Positions 16,001 to 39,800 of a stretch of DNA of 64,000 bases are shown here, in pieces. Position 1 is the stretch's first letter. The number at the start of each line of letters is the position of its first letter. The notes under the pieces are model-generated. The model did no database searches and had not been told where the DNA came from. It worked only from the letters and a program-made list of their open reading frames with translations. Origin of the DNA: Phyllobates terribilis (lineage: Eukaryota); assembly GCF_046119375.1 (NCBI RefSeq), contig NW_027362771.1, positions 559,736,001 to 559,800,000 on the forward strand, given 5' to 3'. A program made the position numbers and the translations under genes.

Positions 16001-18353
16001 GTGCCTTTAAAAAAGACCTATCACCAGGTCAAAAGTGGTCATGTTTGTACAGGAAGAAGCATGTACTCAGGCGAAACAGCTGTTCTACAGAAACATGAAC
16101 AAACAAGCATCTGTTTAGCATGAGTACATGCTTCTTCCTACTCTCGGCCCTGAAGAAGCATGCATTCACGCGAAACAGCTGTTTGTTTGTTGCTGTCTCT
16201 GCTCCTCACCTGATGACCGAATAAAGATGCCATTCTATTTTATGCCATTAAATCAGCCATACAGTTGCAGAGATATGGGATTTTATATTTGCTGCTAATT
16301 TTTATGGTCGTTACAAGATTTAAAAAAAAAAGAATATTATAAACTTATAAAGCGATTTTTGGTTTTGTTTTTTTTTTTTTTTTTTTTTAGAAATCCCTTG
16401 CTAAATTCTTATGCTAATGACCCACAAGTGCAGTGGGCCGGCGCTGCACTTACAGCTTTACTTTCTTTCTCCCTATTCCCCGCCCGCTGCCTGCCTCCTG
16501 TCTATGACTGACAGGTCACTCATGTTTCAGTCTCCTGCCAGAGACAAAAGGCAGATGGCAGGGAATAAGGAGAGAGAGAAGGAAGGGCGGTGAGTGCAGC
16601 GTGGGAGGGCGGTGAGTGCAGCGTGGGAGGGCAGGGAGAGCTGTGAGTGCAGCGTGGGAGGGCAGGGAGAGCTGTGAGTGCAGCGTGGGAGGGCAGGGAG
16701 AGCTGTGAGTGCAGCGTGGGAGGGCAGGGAGAGCTGTGAGTGCAGCGTGGGAGGGCAGGGAGAGCTGTGAGTGCAGCGCTTCGCTCACTGTACTTGTGAC
16801 TCGTTAGCATACAATTTCACCTATGGATTTCTCTAAAACAGCAAAATGTGTTTGGACAAGAAAGTTAAGGAAAGTTACTCAGCATGTGCCTTTACATACA
16901 TACAATTAGTTTGGGGTATAAAATCCCGGTAACTTAGTTTATACCACGATCAACATTTATTGTGTGTCCACCGAATAGGTTATAAGTATACGATCACTGG
17001 GGGTCCAACCACTGGGACCCACACTCATGTTGAATACAGCGGTGCCGTGTCGTCCGTGTGAATGAAGTATTAGTATTCATGCGTGACTATTGCTGTACTC
17101 ACTGCCTATGGAAGCGGTGGCCATAGATACATAAATGTGAGTGGAGTAGTGGCCACTACCTGTGCATTCGACATATTTCATTGATCAGTCAAGGTCTCAG
17201 CGGTCATATATTTCTCACCAATTCTGTTATAAATGTGGTTAGTTGGAGACCACTTTTAACAAACTATTTTGCTAAACTTTAGGCAACAGGGGATGGGAGG
17301 CAAATTCTTGCAAGAATGGATTTCAGCTTACCGCCGGCTCCAGCAGACAGTGCCGCTCTGCTGTAGCCACTGGTCATAGCTGCGCCCTAACACAGCGGAG
17401 GACATTGAAGAAAGGCAGGAGGAGACTGGCCCGCAGTTGTTACCCACTGGTGTAACCATCTGTTTGCTAGGGGTCCTGACTCTTGCGGTGACGAGACCAC
17501 CCCTTTAACTCAATAATTCCTTACCACCACTTGAGCTGATGAAAGTAGAATAGTGAATCGCCAATTCCTAAGATGAGTCTGTTTTATCTCAAAAATGGAG
17601 AAATTCAGGTGAATACTAAGCTGATTCTCATTGTTCCTACTTCCAGGTGCTAATCTGAAAGGTGTGGACATGGAGGGCAGTCAGATGACCGGGATAAACC
17701 TGAGGGTGGCAACCTTGAAGAACGCCAAGTTGAAGAATTGCAACCTGCGTGGTGCCACCTTGGCAGGAACAGACCTGGAGGTAAGAGGGGCAAAGCTCAT
17801 TTGACAGGGTCAGTCCTATAGGTGCCAAATTATGGTAAAGCCGGCCGAATCCTGCAGAATTGGCAGATCGTATGTACGGGTTACTCCCCACTTTCCCCTT
17901 TACCAAGTCGGGGGGAGAAAAGTATTGGGTATATTGAGTGAACCCCTTAACGACCTGTGACATATGGTCTCAAGCAGTCCAGTTGGTGTGTGGAGCGGGC
18001 TCAGGAGCTGAGCCTGCTCTTTACATGGCAGGTGTCGGCTGTGTGTTGAGTGGCATTTGTGTGGTCTGATTCTGGTGGGGCGTTTGGAGCTTCCATCACA
18101 AAACCATTGGGAGCAGGGTGCCGAACTGAGCATGGACATGTGCGAGGGAGTAGCTTCTGGTGGAACCTATGTTCTTCTGACCCCTTTGAGACTTTTTACC
18201 TAATTAAACACTAATTAATTTACTTTCGTCCTCTAGAACTGCGACCTGTCCGGCTGCGACCTCCAGGAAGCCAATCTCCGAGGGTCCAATGTAAAAGGAG
18301 CAATATTTGAAGAGATGCTGACGCCACTACACATGTCACAGAGTGTCAGATAG
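5354..18353 (+). CDS. KCTD9: BTB/POZ domain-containing protein KCTD9, complete, 12 exons, 390 aa (N-terminal domain, BTB, pentapeptide repeats)
   Basis: Twelve GT-AG exons total 1173 nt in frame, from [16 protein letters not shown] to [11 protein letters not shown]. They include [40 protein letters not shown] and [24 protein letters not shown]. Confidence 0.97.
6472..6596 (+). CDS. KCTD9: KCTD9 exon 2
   Basis: ctgcag|[42 protein letters not shown]|GTAATG. Confidence 0.95.
7027..7078. repeat. (AT)n microsatellite; others at about 6124-6148 and 52166-52198
   Basis: Uninterrupted TA dinucleotide runs. Confidence 0.95.
8361..8404 (+). CDS. KCTD9: KCTD9 exon 3
   Basis: ttttctag|[14 protein letters not shown]|GTGAGT. 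Confidence 0.93.
8597..8693 (+). CDS. KCTD9: KCTD9 exon 4
   Basis: tcccag|...[18 protein letters not shown]|GTGCGG. Confidence 0.95.
8783..8841 (+). CDS. KCTD9: KCTD9 exon 5
   Basis: ctccag|[19 protein letters not shown]|GTAGGT. Confidence 0.95.
10277..10405 (+). CDS. KCTD9: KCTD9 exon 6
   Basis: tctcag|[42 protein letters not shown]|GTGAGC. Confidence 0.96.
10493..10560 (+). CDS. KCTD9: KCTD9 exon 7
   Basis: ttgcag|[22 protein letters not shown]|GTGAGT. Confidence 0.96.
11672..12029. mobile_element. TTAA-flanked foldback MITE, palindromic along nearly its full length
   Basis: TTAA|GAGGGTATTC ... GAATACCCCT|TTAA; about 165-bp inverted arms around a short centre. Confidence 0.78.
12231..12326 (+). 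CDS. KCTD9: KCTD9 exon 8
   Basis: atgtag|[32 protein letters not shown]|GTGGGA. Confidence 0.96.
12911..14639 (-). mobile_element. Tc1/mariner DNA transposon, defective, in KCTD9 intron 8
   Basis: TA|CAGTGGCTTGCGAAAGTATTCACC ... GGTGAATACTTTCGCAAACCACAG|TA TIRs with TA target site; - strand transposase remnant [21 protein letters not shown]...[13 protein letters not shown]. Confidence 0.92.
13583..14275. repeat. 37-bp minisatellite, about 19 copies, inside the Tc1
   Basis: Unit GTTTGGAGGTCTCCTTGGTCTTCATGGTGGTGGTGTT; starts at 13583, 13620, ... Confidence 0.95.
14712..14861 (+). CDS. KCTD9: KCTD9 exon 9 (pentapeptide repeats)
   Basis: ttacag|[50 protein letters not shown]|GTAAGC. Confidence 0.96.
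14985..15784. mobile_element. Palindromic MITE with TAA target duplication (PIF/Harbinger-like), KCTD9 intron 9
   Basis: TAA|GGGTATGTGCACACGATGC ... GCATCGTGTGAACTCTGCC|TAA. Confidence 0.65.
15806..15911 (+). CDS. KCTD9: KCTD9 exon 10
   Basis: cctag|[35 protein letters not shown]|GTTAGA. Confidence 0.96.
16590..16778. repeat. 31-bp minisatellite in KCTD9 intron 10
   Basis: Unit GTGAGTGCAGCGTGGGAGGGCAGGGAGAGCT; GTGAGT at 16590, 16612, 16643, 16674, 16705, 16736, 16767. Confidence 0.95.
17647..17780 (+). CDS. KCTD9: KCTD9 exon 11
   Basis: ttccag|[44 protein letters not shown]|GTAAGA. Confidence 0.96.
18237..18353 (+). CDS. KCTD9: KCTD9 exon 12 (terminal coding part)
   Basis: ctctag|[41 protein letters not shown]. 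Confidence 0.96.
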   Translation, partial: NCDLSGCDLQEANLRGSNVKGAIFEEMLTPLHMSQSVR

Positions 18354-19741: not shown

Positions 19742-20782
19742 TTAAGGATTTATGGGGGCCAGTGATGTCTCCCAGTCTATTTTCATTAGTAACAGCCTCG
19801 TGTTGCGTATGACTAAAGGCTGCAAGGCACGAAGGCTCATTCCTGCATTTATTTTGAGATCCAACCACTGTCGTGTGTTACGGACCATGTGATCCTGGCC
19901 TTTAGCCATAGTGTATGGGCAGCTTACGCTATGTCTTAAAGGGACCCTATCACCTTGGGAAACTATGTGCACATAGGGTTAATCTGCAGGTAAATAGTGT
20001 TACAATGCTGCCTAGCCGCCTTACTGAAATTGCGGCTACCAGAAGAAAATGAACTTATTTCCTCCCAGGAGCCGCCGGCTTTCAGTCACTGAGGGACACA
20101 ATGAGGAGCAGTTACAATCAGTACAAACTATTCTGTGCACCCAGCGGCTCAGTATGCTGTGAGCCGCGGCTGTAAGCACTCCCCGCCATTTTGATTGATA
20201 GTCGGCTCTGCAGCGCATCTATACAGAGAGAGCTGTCAATCAAAGTGCCGCCCCTTTGACTGAAAGCCAGCGGCTCCCGGGAGAAAATATGTTCATTTTT
20301 TTTTTTACCCCAGTAAGGCGGCAGGGCAGCATTGTAACACTACTAATCTGCAGTTAACCCTATATCTTTAGGTAAATAGCATTTTCCAAAGGAACAGATT
20401 CCTGTGTATTCTACCCTTACAGGTAATTATGTATTGTCATATAGACAGATAACAAGTAGATTATGTTATGCATTAAAGGGCTAAGTCGGGTTCAGAAAAT
20501 TAATTAAAAAAAAAAAAATCTGCAAAAATATCATCCATGCAATTTTTTTTACCATTTTAAATGAAAAAACCTACAGAATGCAATTCCATGGGCTAATGGC
20601 TTTTTTTAATGCTTTACCCTGTACAAAAAAAAAAATGCATATAAATTAAATGACTTGTCCCTCTAATAGCCTAAAAAAATAAAATATGTGGCTGTCAAGG
20701 AGCCAATAAAAAAAAAAAAGATTTTCAGGTCATGTGGAGAGATGACACGACACAAACGTCTAAAGCTTTTCCCGTGAAGCAT

Positions 20783-20960
20783 TAATCCCGCTGTGGCTAA
20801 ATTAATCTGGATTAACCTGTAGGGAAGTTTTAGATTAATGGGGTCAATGTGATCTCTTCACCGCAAGAGCGTTGTTTGTGCTGCTTCTTAAATAGCGGGT
20901 GACGAGTGCTGGGCGACAGACCGTGCCTGGCAGAAGTGCTGCTGTCACCTGTACGACCAG
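20783..20960 (+). promoter_or_regulatory. Candidate GNRH1 proximal promoter and non-coding exon 1
   Basis: TAATCC 20783, TAATCT 20803, GGATTA 20809, AGATTA 20832; TTAAATA TATA-like at 20888; consensus donor CAG|GTAAGT at 20960/20961; unique, non-repetitive-looking sequence between KCTD9 and the GNRH1 coding exons. Confidence 0.55.
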
Positions 20961-24804: not shown

Positions 24805-26625
24805 AGGATCACCTGTGTGCAGTATAGCAAATCTGTCTGCAGATTTTCAAAATTCAAACAGAATACATTTAATAAATCTCAAAGACCTGATGAGTCTAGT
24901 GTACTTACTTTAAAAATCTAAGTCGGAATGGCTGTATATAATCCATTTTTAAAAATTTCCTTGCCTATATTAAAATAAGCATTTTAAGAGTCCAGCTCTA
25001 GCTAGTTGGGAATCGTTGTGGGACATCATCATTATAGATTATCAGAGGACAGGTGAAGATTTCTTTTATTAACCAAAAAATAAAACCAGTAAAAGAGGGT
25101 CAGGGAATATTTATTTCTGTTAAAGGACTTTTCTTTGTGTGTCTTTATTTATTTTGACAACGGGGTTAGTAATGGGGGTGTCTGATAGACACCTCTCCAT
25201 TACTAACCCCTGTGCTTGATGTCAGCTGACATCAACCTCAAAACCATTACCCCACTTGCCAACACACCAGGGCAAGTGGGAAGGGCCGAGGCTAAGCACC
25301 AGAATTGCAGCATCTAATGGATGCACCATTTCTGGGGCGGCTGAGGGCTGATGTTATTAGTCCGGGAAGGGGTCAATATCCATGGCCCCTTCTCAGGCTA
25401 TTACTATCAACCCACAACTGTTTAGCCTTTGCCGGTTATTAAAATTAGGGGGACCCCATGTCATTTTGTTTTGGGGTCCCCCCTTTAATAACCAGTAATG
25501 ACTAAGCAAACAGCTGTGAGCTGTTATTAATAGGCTGGGAATCTTTATGGATATTGGCCCCTTCCAAGAATATTAACACTAGCGCCCAGCTGTTGGCTTT
25601 CCCTCAGCTGGTTAGGAAAATTTAGGGGGTCCACATGCCGTTTTTTTTCCAATTTATTTAATTCGTGCAATACACAAACTGCGGGTGCTGACTCCAACTC
25701 TCATCAGCATCATGCTGATCACAGGGAGAGTAGGCGACAATGATGACAGTAGGATTCAGCGCCCGAAGCTTGGAAACAGCGCTAAATGTACAGCTTTTCC
25801 CAGGCGCCAGTACGTGTCACACTGATGGCACAAGGATTTCATCCGTGTGTCATCAGTGTGCACATGTGCAGGACGTATTGCGCCCTTCGCTGGTGGCAAA
25901 AAAACGGACATGTCAACATGTTTTGTATACGGACACACGGTCTGTACGGACACACGGTCTGTGTGAACACACTGACGTGTGCAGCCCCATAGATTTGAAC
26001 GGGTCTACGTGTGTCTCCAGTATGTGTGAAAACTGTCACCACACGTACTGGAGACATGTGCAGGAGGTCTAAAGTACGCGGAAGTCATTAAAATTCGTGC
26101 CCTAGGTGTGATTCTTGGTGCTGGAACACTCAGCATTGACATGTTAGTACTCACTGTTAACCTGTAATACCAAACTCAACCATTGAAAAACGGCGGTGCT
26201 ATTGCAGAAATTTCTTTTTCTAATCTTGGAGATTCATTATTGCAGACCCCATACGTTTAACATGTTTCACGTAGTCCATGATGTGTAGACAACTGGTTCT
26301 CCCACTCTGTTGTCGTCTCGAGATCTAAATTTGCTGTATGCCTAATGAGGAGTCTGGCTTTGCCATTCTTTTCAATGCAGTTAACTAAGAATACTATACC
26401 AATATATGTATACGGACCAGAAAGTATTCCAAAATGAAAACCTGCCATGATGCGCAGCATTCAAGAATCCATTTTTTGGATGCAAGAAACGGACCTCCAA
26501 CGTTCAAATAACTGAACTTAGATCACCATAGGACACTTACATGATCCAAGTTCTGGTATGATAAATCCCTGCTTAGAAAGTCTGTGAGGCCCTTATTAAT
26601 ACACATATTGGTTTGTTATTTCAGG

Positions 26626-26769
26626 ATGAGCCACCGTGGGACACCATGTTTCCTCCTTATACTTGTTCTCCTCTTGTCTGATCATATGACTTATTCTCAG
26701 CATTGGTCATATGGGCTGCAGCCAGGAGGGAAGCGCGACTTAGAAACACTCCAGGACTCCTATCCAGAG
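26626..26769 (+). CDS. GNRH1: GNRH1 first coding exon (signal peptide, decapeptide at 26698-26727, GKR)
   Basis: atttcag|G ATG AGC...CCA GAG|GTAATA. Confidence 0.96.
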
Positions 26770-29463
26770 GTAATAACAAATGGGATCAAAAGTCACCCCC
26801 TCCCCCCCATACTTATGATGTGTATGGGGGCCTTATCAAGACCAGAACTTTTATCTCGCTAGTGACCATGTTTGCAAATTAGCTCTCCTCCCGGAGGAGA
26901 GTTTGGTCCCTAATGCCATCTATTGGAAGTCGATACCCTATAATTGTCCATAATCAGTGTAGAATAGTGTAAGGATGGCTTTCTGAGATGTGTTTGATGA
27001 TGGTCTAGATCAGGGGTCTCAAACACGCGGCCCGCGGGCCGCATGCGGCCCCTGAGGCTGCTTTATGCGGCCCGCAGGCACAGACCCCTTGATGATCCCG
27101 ACCTGGTCCAGGAGGAGCCGCCGACAGCAGCGCTGCATTGCCGCACAGAGACTGTTTCCCAGCACTGCATTTCCAATGACAGCCGCTGACCAATCAGAGG
27201 CCAGCAGCTGATATCTGCGTGTCGGCGCAGTGAGTATGATGTCATTGCCGTACGCTGATGTCAGCTGCTGGCCTCTGATTGGCCGGCGGCTGACATTGAA
27301 AATGCTGTGCTGGGAGACAGTCTCTGTGCGGCAATGCAGCGCTGCTGTCGGCGGCTCCTCCTGGACCAGGTCGGGATCGTCAAGGGGTCTGACTCTGTGG
27401 TGCCTGCGGGACACATCTGCAGGAAGGCCGCCGAGGGAACGGAGGACAGGTGAGAATCATCTTTTTTTTTTTTATGTGTGTGAAGAACAGCACAGGGGGC
27501 ACATAGCCACAGGACGGGGACCTGGATGGGGCACATAGCCAAAAGATGGGGACCTGGATGGGGCACATAGCCTCAAGAGGGGGACCTGGATGGGGCACAT
27601 AGCCACAAGATGGGGACCTGGATGGGGCACATAGCCTCAAGAGGGGGACCTGGATGGGGCACATAGCCACAAGATGTGGACCTGGATGGGGCACAGAGCC
27701 ACAAGATGGGGACCTGGATGGGGCACATAGCCACAAGAGGGGACCTGGATGGGGCACATAGTCACAAGAAGGGGACCTGGATGGGCACATACCCACAAGA
27801 TGTGGACCTGGATGGGGCACATAGCCACAAGATGTGGACCTGGATGGGGCACATAGCCACAGGATGGGGACCTGGATGGGGCACATAGCCACAGGATGGG
27901 GACCTGGTTGGGGCACATTAGTACAAGATGGGGACATTACTACAAGATGTTTGCCATTATTACTATATGATGCTAATTGTAAGACAATATTACTGAATGT
28001 GGCCAATTGGGGGAAACAAAATTGTAAAAATCAAAAAAATAAAAATAAAGCCTGAAAAAATATTGGGCACTAAAAATGCTGTTTTATATGTAAACTAAAG
28101 TAAACACAAAAAAGTGCACGTTTATTATCGCCACATCCATAACGACCCAAGCTATAAAAAAATAAACATGGCAAAACTGTTCAAAAGGTGTATACAAAAA
28201 AAAATGGTATCACTAAAAATGTCACATTGAACAAAAAATGCGGCCCCCCAAATTCAAATTTTTTCCATTTGCGGCCCATATACCCAGCCGAGTTTGAGAC
28301 CCCTGGTCTAGATGGTCTTATAAGCTTTGCATTGCTCCCTGTGAAAAGAATGTAATAGCTTTCCTCCAGGAGGAAAAATACATCTCATGAGTGGAGTACT
28401 AGACAGGTTTTCACCACTCAATTGCAAAGAGGATGGCATCAGTCAAAGCTAAACCCCCTTTCTCCAAGGACACCATAGCAGTTGAATAGTCTGGGGGTTC
28501 ATATGTCTATATTTTTTAATTTTACTATTTACATTTATTTGATTTTACAAATTTTCTCTTGACTTTATATATAGACTATGCTAAGCTTCCATAAAAATAA
28601 ACTATTAGAAATAGTATATAACTACTTGATACAGTGTTAGCGCTGGTTATGCAATTTGTAGCGCAAGAGGTTTATAATTATAACCTACTTCAGAATGGCT
28701 GTAACTTACCAGTGAAGACCTTGTGTGCAAAAGAAAAAAAAAAGTGGCCTAAGTGTAGACCCCATGGCCAGTCCTGCCCTATTCTCAGTATTATCCATAA
28801 AAAAGTGCAATACAATATATATTACTTGTAATACATAGATAGGCTCAGTTTTTGTATCCATTGACATGACTTTATCCATCTAGACTAGAGCATGGGCTGT
28901 CTTTGTTCATTTCTTAGACTCAGAATGAAGTTTCCTTGTTCACAGAGCCAAAGCGTCTTGAGTGTTTCCTGCCACAAAACAGACTTAGCATCATGAGGGG
29001 AGCTTTGGTGAGTTGGGGAAAAGATTCCCAGCCCTGTGAAAAAAACCATCTTACCATATAGCATACTTATTAGTGATAATACTTGCATTTATTACATACT
29101 CTTTTTCACTGTATCAGTGGTAACCTTCCAGCTTGTTTGCGCAACTAGGCTTATTGTGGTACCGTTTTGGCTTTTAATTCTTTAATTAGTATGGTGATAT
29201 TTAGATAAAACACACAACACAAGGGGAGCTCAAAGGAACTTTAAAAGGTGGCCATGCTGGGGATGGTTTTAGCTTAGACTGGAGTTGTGTTGCAATAAAG
29301 AAACTGATGGATTGGCAAAGTAGTATAAAAGCCAAAAGTTACATGCATTTTATAGATTTCATCCATTGGGATGTAATTACACAGTACATATTTGAACTTT
29401 ATGGTATTTTTTGACTTACAGATGAATTGGCTGGAGGGAGAAAATGGCAGAAAGAAGATGTGA
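26626..29463 (+). CDS. GNRH1: Progonadoliberin-1 (prepro-GnRH1), 91 aa; coding exons 26626-26769, 28918-29007, 29422-29463
   Basis: 24-aa signal peptide, [13 protein letters not shown] processing site, then GAP ([11 protein letters not shown]|[30 protein letters not shown]|[13 protein letters not shown]). Lies between KCTD9 and DOCK5, the conserved GNRH1 position. Confidence 0.96.
27011..28305. mobile_element. Non-autonomous hAT-type element in the GNRH1 intron after the decapeptide exon
   Basis: TIRs CAGGGGTCTCAAAC / GTTTGAGACCCCTG; perfect 8-bp TSD GTCTAGAT at 27003-27010 and 28306-28313. Confidence 0.92.
27495..27915. repeat. 32-bp minisatellite, about 13 copies, inside the hAT element
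   Basis: Unit GGGGCACATAGCCACAAGATGGGGACCTGGAT; CCTGGAT recurs at 27521, 27553, 27585, 27617. Confidence 0.92.
28918..29007 (+). CDS. GNRH1: GNRH1 GAP middle exon
   Basis: ttcttag|ACT CAG AAT...GCT TTG|GTGAGT; 90 nt. Confidence 0.92.
29422..29463 (+). CDS. GNRH1: GNRH1 terminal coding exon
   Basis: ttacag|[16 protein letters not shown]; resembles the amphibian GAP C-terminus. Confidence 0.92.
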   Translation: MNWLEGENGRKKM

Positions 29464-29495
29464 AGAGATCCCACATTTCATAGCAGATATGATGT

Positions 29496-29501
29496 AATAA
29501 A
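29496..29501 (+). terminator. GNRH1 polyadenylation signal
   Basis: AATAAA 33 nt after the stop codon. Confidence 0.65.
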
Positions 29502-30136
29502 GTACAAGCTGTGATTACTGTGAATCATGTCGTAATAAGGAGTATAGCTATAGGAGGTGCTGGAGAAAAAAAGCACACAAAGGCCCCTCTGCCCCATGAG
29601 ACACCAGTATTATAAATGACATGTGGTCAGTGTCGGACTGGGGTGGCAAGGGCCCACCAGTGACCAACTCCAGGGCCCAACTTTTCAGCTACATGCTAAT
29701 GTGACATTATCCTCAGTCACAAATGTTTATAACAATGAACTGGATAGATTGTTAAATGAATAAGATGCTGCCTTTGTCTTTACATTGATTCAAGTAGTGG
29801 CCCACCGGAGGAATCTCCTGTTCTCCTTTGGGCCAGTCCAAGCCTGCATGTGGTATGTGGGTCCCTGTTACTTTTGTATTGGGGTCCAGGATCTTGAAGT
29901 TACACATCTGGTTATATACTGTATGACCACAGAACTGGATGATGTTTTAATATTACCAGCAATGGTCCTTATATAGTCACTGAGGTATCCCCAAACTTTG
30001 CATACATCAATAATTTGTTATATACTTTATCAGATAAATCAGCATCTTTCTCCACTTATGAGCCACCTTCTAATCCCACCCCTCGTGAAATCACCATCCA
30101 CTCTAATAAAACAGCTCACATCAATCTTGGACAAGC

Positions 30137-30428
30137 CAGCACAGTGAGGAGTCAGGTTACACCTCTTATGTAGGGAGGTGAGAGGAACAAATCAGCACAG
30201 TGAGGAGTCAGGTTACACCGCTTATGTATAAAAGGTGAGAGGAACAATCAGCACAGTGAGGAGTCAGGTTACACCGCTTATGTATAAAAGGTGAGAGGAA
30301 CAATCAGCACAGTGAGGAGTCAGGTTACACCTCTTATGTATAAAAGGTGAGAGGAACAATCAGCACAGTGAGGAGTCAGGTTACACCTCTTATGTATAAA
30401 AGGTGAGAGGAACAATCAGCACAGTGAG
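30137..30428. repeat. 56-bp tandem repeat, about 5 copies
   Basis: CAGCACAGTGAGGAGTCAGGTTACAC...GAGAGGAACAAT starts at 30137, 30193, 30249, 30305, 30361, 30417. Confidence 0.95.
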
Positions 30429-30881: not shown

Positions 30882-33800
30882 CACTGTGTGCAGAATTATT
30901 GGCTCAGTGAGTATTTTGACCGTATCATAATTTTTACGCAGATTTTCCAGCTTCGAGCTGTATAAAGGTGAATGATTATTTGATGGCGCTGACCAGGTGA
31001 TGTGTAATGAGGGGGTGCAGACTAAGGATACAACGCCCTTTATCCAGGGGTGCAGGATTGTTAGGCAGCTTCTTTTCCTCAGGCAAAATGGGCCAAAAGA
31101 TCTAACCGAGTCTGAAAAGTCACAAATTGTTACAAGTCGTACAGAGGATGCAGCACTCTAGAAACTCCTCCGATATTGGGGCGATCACAGAACCAGCAAA
31201 CGCTTTGCTACAAATAGTCAAAAGGAAGCAAAAAATGTGCTGAGAAATAAAGACGCAGATTATATCCCCAAATATCTGAGAAGAATCAAACGTGAAGCAA
31301 CAAGGAAGCCATTATCCTCCAGAGCTGAATATTCCATAACTACAGCCTCCCTGGAGGCCAGAAGTACAAGATGGTCAGTGCTCAGAGACACGGCCGAGGT
31401 GAGGAGGCTGAGCCCGACCACCACTGAGCAAGACACAGAAGTACAAGGTGTTCAGTGCTCAGAGACACGGCCGAGGTGAGGAGGCTGAGCCCGACCACCA
31501 CTAAGCAAGACACAGAAGTACAAGGTGTTCAGTGCTCAGAGACATGGCCGAGGTGAGGAGGCTGAGCCCGACCACCACTGAGCAAGACACAGAAATACAA
31601 GGTGTTCAGTGCTCAGAGACACGGCCGAGGTGAGGAGGCTGAGCCCGACCACCACTGAGCAAGACACAGAAGTACAAGGTGTTCAGTGCTCACAGACACG
31701 GCTGAGGTGAGGAGGCTGAGCCCGACCACCACTGAGCAAGACACAGAAGTACAAGGTGTTCAGTGCTCAGAGACACGGCCGAGGTGAGGAGGCTGAGCCC
31801 GACCACCACTGAGCAAGACACAGAAGTACAAGGTGTTCAGTGCTCACAGACACGGCTGAGGTGAGGAGGCTGAGCCCGACCACCACTGAGCAAGACACAG
31901 AAGTACAAGGTGTTCAGTGCTCAGAGACACGGCCGAGGTGAGGAGGCTGAGCCCGACCACCACTGAGCAAGACACAGAAGTACAAGGTGTTCAGTGCTCA
32001 CAGACACGGCTGAGGTGAGGAGGCTGAGCCCGACCACCACTGAGCAAGACACAGAAATACAAGGTGTTCAGTGCTCAGAGACACAGCTGAGGTGAGGAGG
32101 CTGAGCCCGACCACCACTGAGCAAGACACAGAAGTACAAGGTGTTCAGTGCTCACAGACACGGCTGAGGTGAGGAGGCTGAGCCCGACCACCACTGAGCA
32201 AGACACAGAAGTACAAGGTGTTCAGTGCTCAGAGACACGGCCGAGGTGAGGAGGCTGAGCCCGACCACCACTGAGCAAGACACAGAAGTACAAGGTGTTC
32301 AGTGCTCAGAGACACGGCCGAGGTGAGGAGGCTGAGCCCGACCACCACTGAACAAGACACAGAAGTACAAGGTGTTCAGTGCTCAGAGACACGGCCGAGG
32401 TGAGGAGGCTGAGCCCGACCACCACTGAGCAAGACACAGAAGTACAAGGTGTTCAGTGTTCAGAGACACAGCTGAGGTGAGGAGGCTGAGCCCGACCACC
32501 ACTGAGCAAGACACAGAAGTACAAGGTGTTCAGTGCTCAGAGACACAGCCGAGGTGAGGAGGCTGAGCCCGACCACCACTGAGCAAGACACAGAAGTACA
32601 AGGTGTTCAGTGCTCAGAGACACGGCCGAGGTGAGGAGGCTGAGCCCGACCACCACTGAACAAGACACAGAAGTACAAGGTGTTCAGTGCTCAGAGACAC
32701 GGCTGAGGTGAGGAGGCTGAGCCCGACCACCACTGAGCAAGACACAGAAGTACAAGGTGTTCAGTGCTCAGAGACACGGCCGAGGTGAGGAGGCTGAGCC
32801 CGACCACCACTGAGCAAGACACAGAAGTACAAGGTGTTCAGTGCTCAGAGACACGGCCGAGGTGAGGAGGCTGAACCCGACCACCACTGAGCAAGACACA
32901 GAAGTACCAGGTGTTCAGTGCTCAGAGACACGGCCGAGGTGAGGAGGCTGAGCCCGACCACCACTGAGCAAGACACAGAAGTACAAGGTGTTCAGTGCTC
33001 AGAGACACGGCCGAGGTGAGGAAGCTGAGCCCGACCACCACTGAGGAAGACACAGAAGTATAAGGTGTTCAGTGCTCAGAGACATGGCCGAGGTGAGGAG
33101 GCTGAGCCCGACCACCACTGAGCAAGACACAGAAGTACAAGGTGTTCAGTGCTCAGAGACACGGCCGAGGTGAGGAAGCTGAGCCCGACCACCACTGAGG
33201 AAGACACAGAAGTATAAGGTGTTCAGTGCTCAGAGACATGGCCGAGGTGAGGAGGCTGAGCCCGACCACCACGGAGCAAGACACAGAAGTACAAGGTGTT
33301 CAGTGCTCAGAGACACGGCCGAGGTGAGGAGGCTGAGCCCGACCACCACTGAGCAAGACACAGAAGTACAAGGTGTTCAGTGCTCAGAGACACGGCCGAG
33401 GTGAGGAGGCTGAGCCCGACCACCACTGAGCAAGACACAGAAGTACAAGGTGTTCAGTGCTCAGAGACACGGCCGAGGTGAGGAGGCTGAGCCCGACCAC
33501 CACTGAGCAAGACACAGAAGTACAAGGTGTTCAGTGCTCAGAGACACGGCTGAGGTGAGGAGGCTGAGCCCGACCACCACTGAGCAAGACACAGAAGTAC
33601 AAGGTGTTCAGTGCTCAGAGACACGGCTGAGGTGAAGAGGCTGAGCCCGACCACCACTGAGCAAGACACAGAAGTACAAGGGGTTCAGTGCTCAGAGACA
33701 TGGCTGAGGTGAGGAGGCTGAGCCCGACCACCACTGAGCAAGACACAGAAGTACAAGGTGTTCAGTGCTCAGAGACACGGCCGAGGTGAGGAGGCTGAGC

Positions 33801-36800
33801 CCGACCACCACTGAACAAGACACAGAAGAACAAGGGGTTCAGTGCTCAGAGACACGGCCGAGGTGAGGAGGCTGAGCCCGACCACCACTGAACAAGACAC
33901 AGAAGTACAAGGTGTTCAGTGCTCAGAGACATGGCCGAGGTGAGGAGGCTGAGCCCGACCACCACTGAGCAAGACACAGAAGTACAAGGTGTTCAGTGCT
34001 CAGAGACATGGCCGAGGTGAGGAGGCTGAGCCCGACCACCACTGAGCAAGACACAGAAGTACAAGGTGTTCAGTGCTCAGAGACACGGCCGAGGTGAGGA
34101 GGCTGAGCCCGACCACCACTGAGCAAGACACAGAAGTACAAGGTGTTCAGTGCTCAGAGACACGGCCGAGGTGAGGAGGCTGAGCCCGACCACCACTGAG
34201 CAAAACACAGAAGTACAAGGTGTTCAGTGCTCAGAGACACGGCCGAGGTGAGGAGGCTGAGCCCGACCACCACTGAGCAAGACACATTAGTACAAGGTGT
34301 TCAGTACTCAGAGACATGGCCGAGGTGAGGAGGCTGAGCCCGACCACCACTGAGCAAGACACAGAAGTACAAGGTGTTCAGTGCTCAGAGACACGGCCGA
34401 GGTGAAGAGGCTGAGCCCGACCACCACTGAACAAGACACAGAAGTACAAGGTGTTCAGTGCTCAGAGACACGGCCGAGGTGAGGAGGCTGAGCCCGACCA
34501 CCACTGAGCAAGACACAGAAGTACAAGGTGTTCAGTGCTCAGACACGGCCGAGGTGAGGAGGCTGAGCCCGACCACCACTGAGCAAGACACAGAAGTACA
34601 AGGTGTTCAGTGCTCAAAGACACGACCAAGGTGAGGAGGCTGAGCCCGACCACCACTGAGCAAGACACAGAAGTACAAGGTGTTCAGAGACACGGCCGAA
34701 GTGAGGAGGCTGAGCCCGACCACCACTGAGCAAGACACAGAAGTACAAGGTGTTCAGTGCTCAGAGACATGGCCGAGGTGAGGAGGCTGAGCCCGACCAC
34801 CACTGAGCAAGACACAGAAGTACAAGGTGTTCAGTGCTCAGAGACACAGCCGAGGTGAGGAGGCTGAGCCCGACCACCACTGAGCAAGACACAGAAGTAC
34901 AAGGTGCTCAGAGACATGGCCGAGGTGAGGAAAACTGAACCCGACCACCACTGAGCAAGACACAGAAGTACAAGGTGCTCAGTGCTCAGAGACACAGCCG
35001 AGGTGAGGAGGCTGAGCCCGACCACCACTGAGCAAGACACAGAAGTACAAGGTGCTCAGAGACATGGCCGAGGTGAGGAAAACTGAACCCGACCACCACT
35101 GAGCAAGACACAGAAGTACAAGGTGTTCAGTGCTCAGAGACACAGCCGAGGTGCTGAGGCTGAGCCCGACCACCACTGAGGAAGACACAGAAGTACAAGG
35201 TGTTCAGTGCTCAGAGACACGGCCGAGGTGCTGAGGCTGAGCCCGACCACCACTGAGGAAGACACAGAAGTACAAGGTGTTCAGTGCTCAGAGACACGGC
35301 CGAGGTGAGGAGGCTGAGCCCGACCACCACTGAGCAAGACACAGAAGCACAAGGTGTTCAGTGCTCAGAGACACGGCTGAGGTGAGGAGGCTGAGCCCGA
35401 CCACCACTGAGCAAGACACAGAAGTACAAGGTGTTCAGTGCTCAGAGACACGGCTGAGGTGAGGAGGCTGAGCCCGACCACCACTGAGCAAGACACAGAA
35501 GAACAAGGTGTTCAGTGCTCAGAGACATGGCCGAGGTGAGGAGGCTGAGCCCGACCACCACTGAACAAGATACAGAAGTACAAGGTGTTTAGTGCTCAGA
35601 GACACGGCCGAGGTGAGGAGGCTGAGCCCGACCACCACTGAACAAGTCACAGAAGTACAAGGTGTTTAGTGCTCAGAGACACGGCCGAGGTGAGGAGGCT
35701 GAACCCGACCACCACTGAGCAAGACACAGAAGTACAAGGTGTTCAGTGCTCAGAGACACGGCCGAGGTGAGGAGGCTAAACCCGACCACCACTGAGCAAG
35801 ACACGGAACTACAAGGTGTTCAGTGCTCAGAGACACGGCTGAGGTGAGGAGGCTGAGCCCGACCACCACTGAACAAGTCACAGAAGTACAAGGTGTTTAG
35901 TGCTCAGAGACACGGCTGAGGTGAGGAGGCTGAGCCCGACCACCACTGAGCAAGACACAGAAGAACAAGGTGTTCAGTGCTCAGAGACATGGTCGAGGTG
36001 AGGAGGCTGAGCCCGACCACCACTGAGCAAGACACAGAAGTACAAGGTGTTCAGTGCTCAGAGACACGGCTGAGGTGAGGAGGCTGAAATCCGACCACCA
36101 CTGAGCAAGACACAGAAGTACAAGGTGTTCAGTGCTCAGAGACATGGTCGAGGTGAGGAGGCTGAGCCCGACCACCACTGAGCAAGACACAGAAGTACAA
36201 GGTGTTCAGTGCTCAGAGACACGGCCGAGGTGAGGAGGCTGAGCCCGACCACCACTGAGCAAGACACAGAAGAACAAGGTGTTCAGTGCTCAGAGACATG
36301 GTCGAGGTGAGGAGGCTGAGCCCGACCACCACTGAGCAAGACACAGAAGTACAAGGTGTTCAGTGCTCAGAGACATGGCCGAGGTGAGGAGGCTGAGCCC
36401 GACCACCGCTGAGCAAGACACAGAAGTACAAGGTGTTCAGTGCTCAGAGACACGACCAAGGTGAGGAGGCTGAATCCGACCACCACTGAGCAAGACACGG
36501 AAGTACAAGGTGTTCAGTGCTCAGAGACATGGTCGAGGTGAGGAGGCTGAGCCCGACCACCACTGAGCAAGACACAGAAGTACAAGGTGTTCAATGCTCA
36601 GAGACACGGCCGAGGTGAGGAGGCTGAGCCCGACCACCACTGAGCAAGACACAGAAGTACAAGGTGTTCAGTGCTCAGAGACATGGTTGAGGTGAGGAGG
36701 CTGAGCCCGACCACCACTGAGCAAGACACAGAAGAACAAGGTGTTCAGTGCTCAGAGACATGGTCGAGGTGAGGAGGCTGAGCCCGACCACCACTGAGCA

Positions 36801-39800
36801 AGACACAGAAGTACAAGGTGTTCAGTGCTCAGAGACACGGCCGAGGTGAGGAGGCTGAGCCCGACCACCACTGAGCAAGACACAGAAGAACAAGGTGTTC
36901 AGTGCTCAGAGACATGGTCGAGGTGAGGAGGCTGAGCCCAACCACCACTGAGCAAGACACAGAAGTACAAGGTGTTCAGTGCTCAGAGACATGGCCGAGG
37001 TGAGGAGGCTGAGCCCAACCACCACTGAGCAAGACACAGAAGTACAAGGTGTTCAGTGCTCAGAGACACGGCTGAGGTAAGGAGGCTGAGCCCGACCACC
37101 ACTGAGCAAGACACAGAAGTACAAGGTGTTCAGTGCTCAGAGACACGGCTGAGGTGAGGAGGCTGAGCCCGACCACCACGGAGCAAGACACAGAAGTACA
37201 AGGTGTTCAGTGCTCAGAGACATGGTCGAGGTGAGGAGGCTGAGCCCGACCACCACTGAGCAAGACACAGAAGTACAAGGTATTCAGTGCCCAGAGACAT
37301 GGCCGAGGTGAGGAGGCTGAGCCCAACCACCACTGAGCAAGACACAGAAGTACAAGGTGTTCAGTGCTCAGAGACACGGCTGAGGTGAGGAGGCTGAGCC
37401 CGACCACCACTGAGCAAGACACAGAAGTACAAGGTGTTCAGTGCCCAGAGACACGGCCGAGGTGAGGAGGCTGAGCCCGACCACCACTGAGCAAGACACA
37501 GAAGTACAAGGTGTTCAGTGCTCAGAGACATGGCCGAGGTGAGGAGGCTGAGCCCGACCACCACGGAGCAAGACACAGAAGTACAAGGTGTTCAGTGCTC
37601 AGAGACATGGCCGAGGTGAGGAGGCTGAGCCCGACCACCACTGAGCAAGACACAGAAGTACAAGGTGTTCAGTGCTCAGAGACACGGCCGAGGTGAGGAG
37701 GCTGAGCCCGACCACCACTGAGCAAGACACAGAAGTACAAGGTGTTCAGTGCTCAGAGACATGGCCGAGGTGAGGAGGCTGAGCCCAACCACCACTGAGC
37801 AAGACACAGAAGTACAAGGTGTTCAGTGCTCAGAGACACGGCCGAGGTGAGGAGGCTGAGCCCGACCACCACTGAGCAAGACACAGAAGTACAAGGTGTT
37901 CAGTGCTCAGAGACATGGCCGAGGTGAGGAGGCTGAGCCCGACCACCACTGAGCAAGACACAGAAGTACAAGGTGTTCAGTGCTCAGAGACACGGCCGAG
38001 GTGAGGAGGCTGAGCCCGACCACCACTGAGCAAGACACAGAAGTACAAGGTGTTCAGTATTCAGAGACATGGCAGAGGTGAGGAGGCTGAGCCCGACCAC
38101 CACTGAGCAAGACACAGAAGAACAAGGTGTTCAGTGCTCAGAGACATGGCCGAGGTGAGGAGGCTGAGCCCGACCACCACTGAGCAAGACACAGAAGAAC
38201 AAGGTGTTCAGTATTCAGAGACATGGCAGAGGTGAGGAGGCTGAGCCCGACCACCACTGAGCAAGACACAGAAGTACAAGGTGTTCAGTGCTCAGAGACA
38301 TGGTCGAGGTGAGGAGGCTGAGCCCGACCACCACTGAGCAAGACACAGAAGTACAAGGTGTTCAGTGCTCAGAGACACGGCTGAGGTGAGGAGGCTGAGC
38401 CCGACCACCACTGAGCAAGACACAGAAGTACATGGTGTTCAGTGCTCAGAGACACGGCCGAGGTGAGGAGGCTGAGCCCGACCACCACTGAACAAGACAC
38501 AGAAGTACAAGGTGTTCAGTGCTCAGAGACATGGTCGAGGTGAGGAGGCTGAGCCCAACCACCACTGAGCAAGACACAGAAGTACAAGGTGTTCAGTGCT
38601 CAGAGACATGGCCGAGGTGAGGAGGCTGAGCCTGACCACCACTGAGCAAGACACAGAAGTACAAGGTGTTCAGTGCTCAGAGACATGGCCGAGGTGAGGA
38701 GGCTGAGCCCGACCACCACTGAGCAAGACACAGAAGTACAAGGTGTTCAGTGCTCACAGACATGGTCGAGGTGAGGAGGCTGAACCCAACCACCACTGAA
38801 CAAGACACAGAAGTACAAGGTGTTCAGTGCTCACAGACATGGTCGAGGTGAGGAGGCTGAACCCAACCACCACTGAACAAGACACAGAAGAGGAAACATC
38901 AAGACTGGGCCAAGAAATATCCGAAGGCAGGTTTTTCAAAGGTTTTATGGACTGATGTGATGAGAGTGACTCTTGGCGGACCAGATGGATTGGTCCATGG
39001 CTGGATAAGTAATGGGTAGAGACCTCCACTTCCACTCAGATGCCAAGGAGGTGGAGGTGGGTACTGCTATGGGTTGGTATTATTAAAGATGAGCTAGTTG
39101 GACGTTTCAGGTAGAAGATGGACTCAAAATCAACTCCCAAACCTACTGCCAGTTTTTAGAGGACACTTTCTTCAAGCAGTAGTACAGAAAAAAAGTCTGC
39201 GTCTTTCAAGAAATCCATGATATTTCTGCAGGACAACTCTCCATCGCATCATTGAAGTCTCCACTGCTCAGCTGCCAGTAACGGCCTTAACGATGAAAGA
39301 GTAATGGTCCGGGCCCGTTCCTCACCGCAACTAAACCCTACTGAGAACTTGTGGGACCTTCTTGAATGGGAGAATTACGATGAAGGGAAACAGTCACCTC
39401 TCTGAACAGTGTCTTGGACTGTGGTTGGTGCTGCCCAAAAAGTGGATCGTCAACAGATGAAGAAACTGGCAGACTCCATGGATGGAGCTTATGACTTATT
39501 GAGAAGAAGGGGCGGCTATGGTACTATATTAGTCACTAATATTTTTGCGACATGTCAGAAATATATTTTTGTAGATTTTGCATTGTTGGTTATTATTCTC
39601 ACTGTAATAGATGAACATAAACAATTGAGATGGAATTTTTTTTTTTTTTTTTAGTTTTTCATTTAGTTACATAATAATTCTGCACACAGATATTCTCCTA
39701 AAAAAGACAAAACCTCACTTTTACTTTTGTTAAATATTCAGGTTTCAGATTTATTAATCTTTGGGAATGACCGGCAGCGCTGGAGTTATTCAATAATAAT

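What the first reader, a model, noticed from the sequence alone, without database searches (positions are those of the whole stretch)
26698..26727. Frog-type GnRH1 gene encodes the [Gln8] (chicken GnRH-I) decapeptide
Seen: CAG CAT TGG TCA TAT GGG CTG CAG CCA GGA + GGG AAG CGC = [13 protein letters not shown], in an intact gene at the GNRH1 syntenic position with an amphibian-like GAP (..MNWLEGEN..). Known: [15 protein letters not shown]2 is chicken GnRH-I, the bird/reptile GnRH1. Xenopus and bullfrog GnRH1 has Arg8, and Rana dybowskii has a Trp8 variant. Position 8 drives receptor selectivity via extracellular loop 3. Inference: if the host is an anuran, this is probably a convergent Arg8>Gln change. 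An ancestral CGG codon is one CpG transition from both CAG (Gln) and TGG (Trp), which could explain repeated changes at this residue.
Basis: partly seen in the sequence, partly recalled or inferred. Interest (0 to 1): 0.75.

Follow-up and report, generated by a model that had tools for sequence, protein, structure and literature searches.

The report
Poison frog GnRH1 encodes bird-type hormone
The golden poison frog's gene for the master reproductive hormone GnRH encodes the bird/reptile form (glutamine instead of arginine at position 8); this one-letter change is shared by all sequenced poison frogs and arose separately in other frog lineages, but the gene is already in public annotation, so the finding is real and modest.

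Summary
Window 26698-26727 reads [10 protein letters not shown], followed by GKR, inside an intact gene with three coding exons (91 aa).

- **Source:** the window is 100% identical over 22.8 kb to Phyllobates terribilis assembly GCA_046119375.1. The protein equals RefSeq XP_073507034.1.
- **Codon 8:** CAG is seen in DNA contigs from two samples of two studies. It is also in a spliced RNA contig that joins exactly the modelled exons.
- **Synteny:** KCTD9 ends 2.6 kb upstream of the inferred exon 1.
- **Distribution:** Gln8 is not peculiar to this species. It is present in all four sequenced Dendrobatinae. The sister family (Anomaloglossus) has Arg8, encoded CGG. Gln8 also occurs in Rhinoderma darwinii, Pseudophryne corroboree and Microhyla ornata, and Rana has Trp8. 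The other 25 anurans sampled, plus caecilians and salamanders, have Arg8.
- **Independent origins:** a precursor tree with the decapeptide masked needs four changes. A single Gln8 clade is rejected (p-AU 0.0012).
- **Caveat:** amphibians lack the Type I receptor whose ECL3 motif reads Arg8, so the functional effect is unknown.

No paper found describes Gln8 in frogs, and the scan's notes hold no earlier GnRH finding. This is a new member of a known kind, of moderate interest.

The parts
18237..18353 (+). Last coding stretch of the upstream neighbour KCTD9. It ends ..[30 protein letters not shown]. The acceptor site was not mapped.
   Evidence: An open frame ends at 18353. The called 390-aa gene in L003:1-1728 (= window 16626-18353) carries KHA + BTB_2 + Pentapeptide Pfam hits. 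L003 is 100% identical to the window.
20734..20960 (+). Conserved non-coding block holding the inferred proximal promoter and non-coding exon 1 of GnRH1. It contains a TATA-like TTAAATAG at 20888-20895. Exon 1 ends at 20960 (GACCAG|GTAAGT). The 5' end of the exon was not mapped.
   Evidence: The block is 83% identical to Rhinoderma L004:1750-2070. There the same donor is used by the RefSeq isoform X1 (MSR|MSHRG..). Coordinates were checked. No read support was obtained for this part.
26625..26769 (+). GnRH1 exon 2. It holds the start codon (26626), signal peptide (26626-26697), decapeptide (26698-26727), Gly-Lys-Arg processing site (26728-26736) and the first 11 residues of GAP.
   Evidence: The splice sites are confirmed by the spliced contig of X9.
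26719..26721 (+). Codon 8 of the decapeptide: CAG (Gln). Arg8 frogs have CGG or CGA here.
   Evidence: There are no other letters in X1, X5 or X9.
26955..28397 (.). High-copy repeats inside intron 2, including a 32-bp x 13.8 tandem array at 27496-27935. About 1.3 kb of it (27004-28313) has no counterpart in the D. tinctorius intron.
   Evidence: Word depth is about 10^5 in the DNA runs. TRF result. The blastn alignment to L001 breaks between window 27003 and 28314.
28918..29007 (+). GnRH1 exon 3, the middle of GAP ([30 protein letters not shown]).
   Evidence: Both junctions are seen in the X9 contig.
29422..29501 (+). GnRH1 exon 4. It holds the GAP C-terminus [13 protein letters not shown], the TGA stop at 29461-29463, a short 3' UTR and a candidate AATAAA at 29496-29501. 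The cleavage site was not mapped.
   Evidence: The acceptor at 29422 is confirmed by X9.

Best explanation
This is the single, functional GnRH1 (progonadoliberin-1) gene of the golden poison frog, Phyllobates terribilis.

**How the peptide is made (inferred from the standard GnRH pathway).** The 91-aa precursor is cleaved after the signal peptide (..HMTYS|Q). It is then cut at Lys-Arg. Gly11 serves as the amide donor, and the N-terminal Gln cyclises. [quoted passage not shown]

**How Gln8 arose.** The ancestral anuran codon was CGG (Arg). A single G-to-A transition at its CpG gave CAG. The change was fixed after Dendrobatidae split from Aromobatidae and before the Phyllobates / Dendrobates / Ranitomeya split. 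The same replacement happened independently in Microhyla, Pseudophryne and, by species phylogeny, Rhinoderma. The other CpG transition (TGG, Trp) was fixed in Rana.

**Why it recurs (inferred).** Recurrence probably reflects CpG hypermutability together with a receptor set that tolerates it. Amphibians, like birds and lizards, lack the Type I receptor whose SE/DP motif pairs with Arg8.

**Status of each step.** Shown here: sequence, splicing, transcription, orthology, distribution, codon states, purifying selection. Inferred: peptide processing, mutational mechanism, receptor tolerance.
For: - **Sequence and gene model:**
- **Reads:** CAG in two DNA samples from two studies, plus a spliced transcript contig with the exact junctions.
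- **Identity:** the protein is 100% identical to P. terribilis XP_073507034.1. The DNA is 100% identical over 22,838 nt to GCA_046119375.1.
- **Orthology:** best hits are anuran progonadoliberin-1, E = 5e-54. KCTD9 lies immediately upstream. Pfam GnRH passes its cutoff.
- **Distribution:** Gln8 in D. tinctorius, P. terribilis, R. imitator and R. variabilis. Arg8 in Anomaloglossus and 24 other anuran species, 3 caecilians and 2 salamanders. Gln8 also in Rhinoderma, Pseudophryne and Microhyla. Trp8 in R. dybowskii and R. temporaria.
- **Codons:** CAG versus CGG/CGA.
- **Tree with the decapeptide masked:** 4 changes, forced by starred branches. Dendrobatidae 95/91, with Anomaloglossus as sister 96/90. 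Microhyla + Gastrophryne 99/98. A clade of all Gln8 rows is rejected, p-AU 0.0012.
- **Selection:** dN/dS 0.17-0.33.
- **Receptor background:** PMC4232701 and PMC3265131.
- **Tolerance:** Pseudophryne corroboree, with a far more divergent native peptide, responds well to Arg8-based GnRH agonist (PMC10486684).
Against: - The mature peptide has not been observed.
- The tissue of the RNA run is coded, so hypothalamic expression is not shown.
- A Rhinoderma + Dendrobatidae clade is not rejected by this 81-column gene alone (p-AU 0.117). The fourth independent origin therefore rests on the accepted Dendrobatidae + Aromobatidae relationship, a starred branch, and lower dS to Anomaloglossus (0.22 versus 0.35).
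- Only four Arg8 codons could be read.
- Mixophyes uses CGA, so the Pseudophryne path may have needed two steps.
- Arg8 has survived at a CpG codon in most amphibians. Position 8 is therefore not free of constraint, and simple tolerance may be too weak an account.
Confidence: 0.88

Rival explanations
1. Ligand-receptor co-evolution: Gln8 was fixed by selection together with changes in the dendrobatid Type II GnRH receptors, so the poison-frog system has functionally converged on the sauropsid one. On this view it is not a tolerated, mutation-driven replacement.
For: Arg8 is conserved at a hypermutable CpG codon across caecilians, salamanders and most frogs. That implies selection on position 8, so each loss needs a reason. 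Gln8 has been stable since the Phyllobates / Dendrobates / Ranitomeya split, under dN/dS 0.17. In Microhyla and Pseudophryne, Gln8 comes with further changes at positions 5-7, as expected if the receptor contact surface shifted.
Against: No receptor sequence could be examined here. Amphibians lack the receptor type known to read Arg8 (PMC4232701). P. corroboree still responds well to Arg8-based agonist (PMC10486684). All five replacements are exactly the two CpG transitions of CGG, which points to mutation supply rather than a specific selected end state.
Confidence: 0.25
2. Sequencing or assembly error: the true codon is CGG.
For: None was found. It was a legitimate worry for a single base in one assembly.
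Against: CAG appears in contigs of two DNA samples from two studies and in a spliced RNA contig from a third study. The same codon is present in the independent D. tinctorius assembly. Gln8 is also in both Ranitomeya gene models.
Confidence: 0.01
3. Gln8 is an ancestral state retained from the tetrapod ancestor and shared with sauropsids, not a convergent change.
For: The decapeptide is identical to that of birds, crocodilians, turtles and lizards.
Against: Arg8 is found in all caecilians, salamanders, archaeobatrachians and pelobatoids sampled, and in the sister family Aromobatidae. The GAP is anuran-type. The tree nests the Gln8 lineages separately among Arg8 lineages.
Confidence: 0.02
4. 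GnRH1 is decaying or redundant in poison frogs, with GnRH2 taking over, so the change is a symptom of relaxed constraint.
For: Frog receptors bind GnRH2 better than GnRH1 (PMC7976225). The decapeptide is unusually labile in several frogs.
Against: The frame, splice sites and processing site are intact, and the spliced transcript has a word depth of 84. dN/dS is 0.17-0.33. Nine of the ten residues, and the GKR site, are unchanged across Dendrobatinae.
Confidence: 0.04

Closest known systems
Progonadoliberin-1 of Phyllobates terribilis (RefSeq XP_073507034.1) and of other Dendrobatinae (D. tinctorius XP_073413248.1, Ranitomeya imitator XP_069623128.1, R. variabilis XP_077118223.1)
   Same: The P. 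terribilis model is 100% identical to the protein encoded here, and the window is that locus. The others are about 90-96% identical and all carry Gln8.
   Different: Nothing differs for the P. terribilis model. These are automatic gene models, and no paper found comments on residue 8.
Chicken GnRH-I, [Gln8]GnRH, the GnRH1 peptide of birds and most reptiles
   Same: The encoded decapeptide [10 protein letters not shown] and the GKR site are identical.
   Different: The origin is independent. The signal peptide and GAP are anuran-type, only 40-48% identical to sauropsid precursors. The lineage's ancestors had Arg8.
Mammalian-type GnRH1 (Arg8) of Xenopus, bullfrog and most amphibians
   Same: It is the same gene, with the same exon plan, the same KCTD9 neighbour and a homologous GAP ending ..[11 protein letters not shown]..
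   Different: One base of codon 8 differs: CGG versus CAG.
[Trp8]GnRH of Rana dybowskii (Yoo et al. 2000, cited in PMC3265131; UniProt Q9IAU2)
   Same: It is also a lineage-specific replacement of Arg8 in an anuran GnRH1, and it is the other single CpG transition away from CGG. It is shared by R. temporaria.
   Different: The residue is Trp rather than Gln, in a different family (Ranidae). Its pharmacology has been studied, whereas the dendrobatid peptide has not been studied in its own host.

Membership tests
Vertebrate GnRH1 (progonadoliberin-1) | Decapeptide of the form QHWS-x-G-x-x-PG followed directly by the Gly-Lys-Arg amidation and cleavage site | tested here: met
   [13 protein letters not shown] at 26698-26736. 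Pfam PF00446 scores 19.4 bits against a cutoff of 18.5.
Vertebrate GnRH1 (progonadoliberin-1) | Signal peptide ending immediately before Gln1 | tested here: met
   24 residues with the hydrophobic core [10 protein letters not shown] and small residues at -1 and -3 (S, T). They align with the signal peptides of 12 anuran orthologs. The cleavage itself is inferred.
Vertebrate GnRH1 (progonadoliberin-1) | GAP homologous to GnRH1 GAP, not to that of GnRH2 or GnRH3 | tested here: met
   All best hits are progonadoliberin-1, with E down to 5e-54. The sequence falls inside the hyloid GnRH1 clade.
Vertebrate GnRH1 (progonadoliberin-1) | Gene plan: non-coding exon 1; exon 2 with signal peptide + GnRH + GKR + 11 aa of GAP; exons 3 and 4 with the rest of GAP | tested here: met
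   Exons 2-4 are confirmed by a spliced contig. Exon 1 is only inferred, from conservation with Rhinoderma.
Vertebrate GnRH1 (progonadoliberin-1) | Conserved synteny with KCTD9 | tested here: met
   A KCTD9-type gene (KHA, BTB_2, Pentapeptide) ends at window 18353 on the same strand. DOCK5 was not found within the window.
Vertebrate GnRH1 (progonadoliberin-1) | Expression in preoptic/hypothalamic neurons and release at the median eminence | not testable with these tools
   A spliced transcript exists, but the tissue of the run is coded.
Chicken GnRH-I peptide form ([Gln8]GnRH) | Encoded decapeptide identical to that of bird and reptile GnRH1 | tested here: met
   It is identical to the decapeptide in 28 sauropsid precursors, for example Crocodylus P0042 and Falco P0061.
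Chicken GnRH-I peptide form ([Gln8]GnRH) | Mature peptide with N-terminal pyroglutamate and C-terminal glycinamide | not testable with these tools
   The required Gln1 and the Gly-Lys-Arg site are present. Peptide chemistry is needed to test the mature form.

The most novel reading that the evidence does not exclude
Loss of Arg8 in anuran GnRH1 is a recurrent, CpG-fuelled event: at least four changes to Gln and one to Trp among 34 species. On this reading it marks lineages whose pituitary GnRH receptors have changed their ligand preference. Poison frogs, Darwin's frog, corroboree frogs and Microhyla would then have re-tuned hormone-receptor pairs, converging on the sauropsid state. They would respond differently from other frogs to the Arg8-based agonists used in captive breeding.
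Probability: 0.2. Interest if true: 0.6.

Novelty: new member of a known kind. Interest (0 to 1): 0.4.

Why it matters
The textbook view, repeated in a 2021 review (PMC7976225), is that amphibian GnRH-I is the mammalian (Arg8) form, with the Rana [Trp8] peptide as the known exception.

The data here show otherwise. A whole poison-frog subfamily makes the bird/reptile form. Position 8 has been replaced at least four or five times in frogs, each time by one of the two CpG transitions of CGG. This is a clean natural example of mutation bias steering repeated change in a hormone.

It also supplies matched Arg8/Gln8 sister lineages for testing ligand-receptor co-evolution: Anomaloglossus versus Dendrobatinae, Mixophyes versus Pseudophryne, and Gastrophryne versus Microhyla.

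There is a practical side. Breeding programmes for threatened frogs use Arg8-based GnRH agonists. PMC10486684 reports such use in Pseudophryne corroboree, whose native peptide differs at positions 5-8. Knowing the native peptide could guide agonist choice.

The gene itself is ordinary and already annotated.

Tried and rejected
- **DOCK5, the expected downstream neighbour.** I looked for it with ORF listing and a Pfam scan of ten ORFs in 39900-64000. Only a Tc1-type HTH fragment turned up. Small exons in a large frog gene are easily missed, so this says little.
- **Codon-8 DNA for more species.** Rhinoderma isoform X2 was not on record, so I used isoform X1 instead.
- **Wang et al. 2001 on the bullfrog receptors (PMC14595).** This paper is not held, so I found no direct potency data for [Gln8]GnRH on frog receptors.
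- **Literature search for the decapeptide string plus 'frog'.** With min_terms 1 it was swamped by 'frog'. Its only use is that no paper holding both terms ranked first.
- **Receptor (GnRHR) comparison.** It could not be done. No receptor sequence was available from a tool, and I did not type one from memory.
- **Species names of the sequencing runs.** They are coded. I identified the species from exact protein and DNA identity instead.

Full report
**1. The observation**

Window 26698-26736 reads CAG CAT TGG TCA TAT GGG CTG CAG CCA GGA GGG AAG CGC, which translates to [13 protein letters not shown]. Codon 8 (CAG) lies at 26719-26721. A six-frame search finds no other GnRH-like motif in the window.

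The motif lies in an exon bounded by an acceptor (..TTTCAG|G, exon from 26625) and a donor (GAG|GTAATA after 26769). The exon has an ATG at 26626 and a 24-residue signal sequence.

A search for open AG..GT exons found 28918-29007, encoding [30 protein letters not shown]. The last coding exon is 29422-29463, encoding [13 protein letters not shown] and a stop. The precursor is 91 aa. Pfam's GnRH model passes its curated cutoff.

**2. Is the base real, and is the gene used?**

I laid the contigs of four public runs on 26400-29700.
- Two DNA runs, from different samples and studies (X1, X5), each have a ~1-kb contig covering 26400-27000 with no other letter in the exon. X5 differs only in introns: a GGA insertion after 26892 and three single-base differences.
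- Run X9 holds a 401-nt contig that covers exon 2, jumps 26769|28918, covers exon 3 and jumps 29007|29422. Both jumps are at GT..AG, and the exons carry no other letter.
- The DNA runs lack these joints, so the X9 contig is a spliced transcript.

CAG is therefore present in the genome of at least two individuals and in mRNA. The tissue is unknown because run records are coded.

**3. Whose genome?**

The word search returned anuran progonadoliberin-1 proteins. The best was Dendrobates tinctorius at 96% identity. Its 90% cluster also holds Phyllobates terribilis, Ranitomeya imitator and R. variabilis.

The window's protein is identical to the P. terribilis entry XP_073507034.1. The DNA fetched for that entry comes from GCA_046119375.1, JBJBSG010000011.1:559752626-559775463. 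It matches window 16626-39463 at 100% over 22,838 nt.

The window is therefore the golden poison frog (Hyloidea, Dendrobatidae, Dendrobatinae). An earlier scan note names the same host (s1-201002).

**4. Orthology**

A called gene with KHA, BTB_2 and Pentapeptide domains, the KCTD9 architecture, ends at window 18353 on the same strand. From memory, this is the KCTD9-GNRH1 arrangement seen in human.

About 2.4 kb further on lies a block (20734-20960) that is 83% identical to the Rhinoderma locus. It ends in GACCAG|GTAAGT. In Rhinoderma this same donor is used by RefSeq isoform X1, whose extra MSR is read across it. I take it as the promoter and non-coding exon 1. This is an inference, and the 5' end is unmapped.

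DOCK5 was not detected in the window.

**5. Distribution of residue 8**

A profile search plus cluster listings gave GnRH1 for 34 anuran species, 3 caecilians and 2 salamanders.

| State | Species |
|---|---|
| Gln8 | D. tinctorius, P. terribilis, R. imitator, R. variabilis, Rhinoderma darwinii (all [10 protein letters not shown]); Microhyla ornata (QHWSYDMQPG); Pseudophryne corroboree (QHWSFDNQPG) |
| Trp8 | Rana dybowskii, R. temporaria |
| Arg8 | The other 25 anurans, all caecilians and all salamanders. These include Anomaloglossus baeobatrachus (Aromobatidae; QHWSFGLRPG), Gastrophryne (Microhylidae) and Mixophyes (Myobatrachoidea) |

Sauropsids in the same search carry Gln8 and mammals carry Arg8.

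**6. Independent origins**

I built a maximum-likelihood tree of 31 amphibian precursors with the decapeptide masked.
- Four changes of state are needed. Starred branches force four, and the bootstrap range is 4-4.
- Dendrobatidae form a clade (95/91), with Anomaloglossus as sister (96/90).
- Microhyla pairs with Gastrophryne (99/98).
- Rhinoderma lies elsewhere in the hyloid clade (99/99).
- Pseudophryne lies outside the hyloid clade.

The AU test rejects one clade holding all Gln8 rows (p = 0.0012). It does not reject Rhinoderma + Dendrobatidae on these 81 columns alone (p = 0.117).

Three origins are therefore shown by this gene. The fourth rests on three things:
- the starred Anomaloglossus branch;
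- lower synonymous distance from P. terribilis to Anomaloglossus (0.22) than to Rhinoderma (0.35);
- the accepted sister relationship of Dendrobatidae and Aromobatidae, which is established knowledge and was not tested here beyond taxonomy.

**7. Mutational route**

| Codon 8 | Species |
|---|---|
| CAG | P. terribilis, D. tinctorius, Rhinoderma, Pseudophryne |
| CGG | Anomaloglossus, Leptodactylus, Gastrophryne |
| CGA | Mixophyes |

Between Anomaloglossus and the dendrobatids, the context CTG CGG CCA versus CTG CAG CCA differs only by the G-to-A at the CpG. All five position-8 replacements seen in frogs (four Gln, one Trp) are the two CpG transitions of CGG, out of five possible single-step amino-acid changes. 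No ranid DNA could be read.

**8. Constraint and function**

Pairwise dN/dS among P. terribilis, D. tinctorius, Anomaloglossus and Rhinoderma is 0.17-0.33. The other nine residues and the GKR site are unchanged across Dendrobatinae. The gene is under purifying selection.

- The Arg8 contact is with the SE/DP motif in ECL3 of the Type I receptor (PMC3265131).
- Amphibians have lost that receptor, as have anole, chicken and zebra finch (PMC4232701).
- Frog receptors prefer GnRH2 (PMC7976225).
- P. corroboree, whose native GnRH1 differs at positions 5-8, responds well to Arg8-based agonist (PMC10486684).

My reading is that Gln8 is a tolerated change supplied by mutation bias (inference). However, Arg8 persists at a CpG codon in most amphibians, so position 8 is not neutral. 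Receptor co-evolution therefore remains a live rival.

**9. Novelty**

The protein is already an automatic RefSeq model, so the gene is not new. I found no paper describing Gln8 GnRH1 in any frog:
- 'GnRH1' + 'poison frog' gave nothing relevant;
- no paper holds both the decapeptide string and 'frog';
- 'cGnRH-I' + 'anuran' gave only general reviews.

The library lacks most subscription journals, where this literature lives, so absence is weak evidence. The scan's own notes hold no GnRH finding.

**10. Verdict**

The finding is a new member of a known kind, and its interest is moderate.

Noticed in passing
L005:13086-13124 (Pseudophryne corroboree) and protein P0031 (Microhyla ornata): Two frog GnRH1 precursors encode decapeptides with Asp in place of the near-universal Gly6, together with Gln8: QHWSFDNQPG and QHWSYDMQPG. 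As far as I know neither is a named GnRH form. Both are followed by an intact GKR site.
   Followed up: partly
proteins P0130 (Rana temporaria) and P0134 (R. dybowskii): The [Trp8] variant described from R. dybowskii is also encoded by the R. temporaria RefSeq model. Lithobates, Aquarana and Pelophylax keep Arg8, so Trp8 looks like a trait of the genus Rana.
   Followed up: partly
proteins P0003, P0007, P0041, P0084, P0106: Other single-residue variants were seen: Anomaloglossus [Phe5], Eleutherodactylus coqui [Met7], the lizard Hemicordylus [Phe5,Gln8], and the snakes Python and Protobothrops [Phe7,Gln8].
   Followed up: no
window 26955-28397: Intron 2 of GnRH1 holds high-copy repeats, with word depth about 10^5 in the DNA runs. 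They include a 32-bp x 13.8 tandem array at 27496-27935. About 1.3 kb of this (27004-28313) has no counterpart in the D. tinctorius intron.
   Followed up: partly
window 31359-38890: A 77-bp satellite of about 98 copies, 95% alike, lies just downstream of GnRH1. The scan has already noted it (s1-224858). A 56-bp x 5 array lies at 30137-30428.
   Followed up: no
window 45771-46761: A 31-bp x 32 tandem array, 96% alike and G+C-rich, leaves ORFs open in most frames on both strands. It has no Pfam hit.
   Followed up: no
window 59365-59799: This ORF carries Tc1/Sleeping-Beauty-type transposase HTH domains (HTH_Tnp_Tc3_2, E = 4e-10). It is a transposon fragment.
   Followed up: no
window 20734-20960: This non-coding block is 83% identical between Phyllobates and Rhinoderma. 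It has a TATA-like motif and ends at a conserved splice donor. It is a candidate GnRH1 proximal promoter and exon 1.
   Followed up: partly
window 26892, 28529, 28580, 29205: The second DNA sample (X5) differs from the assembly only in introns: a GGA insertion and three single-base differences. None is in coding sequence.
   Followed up: no
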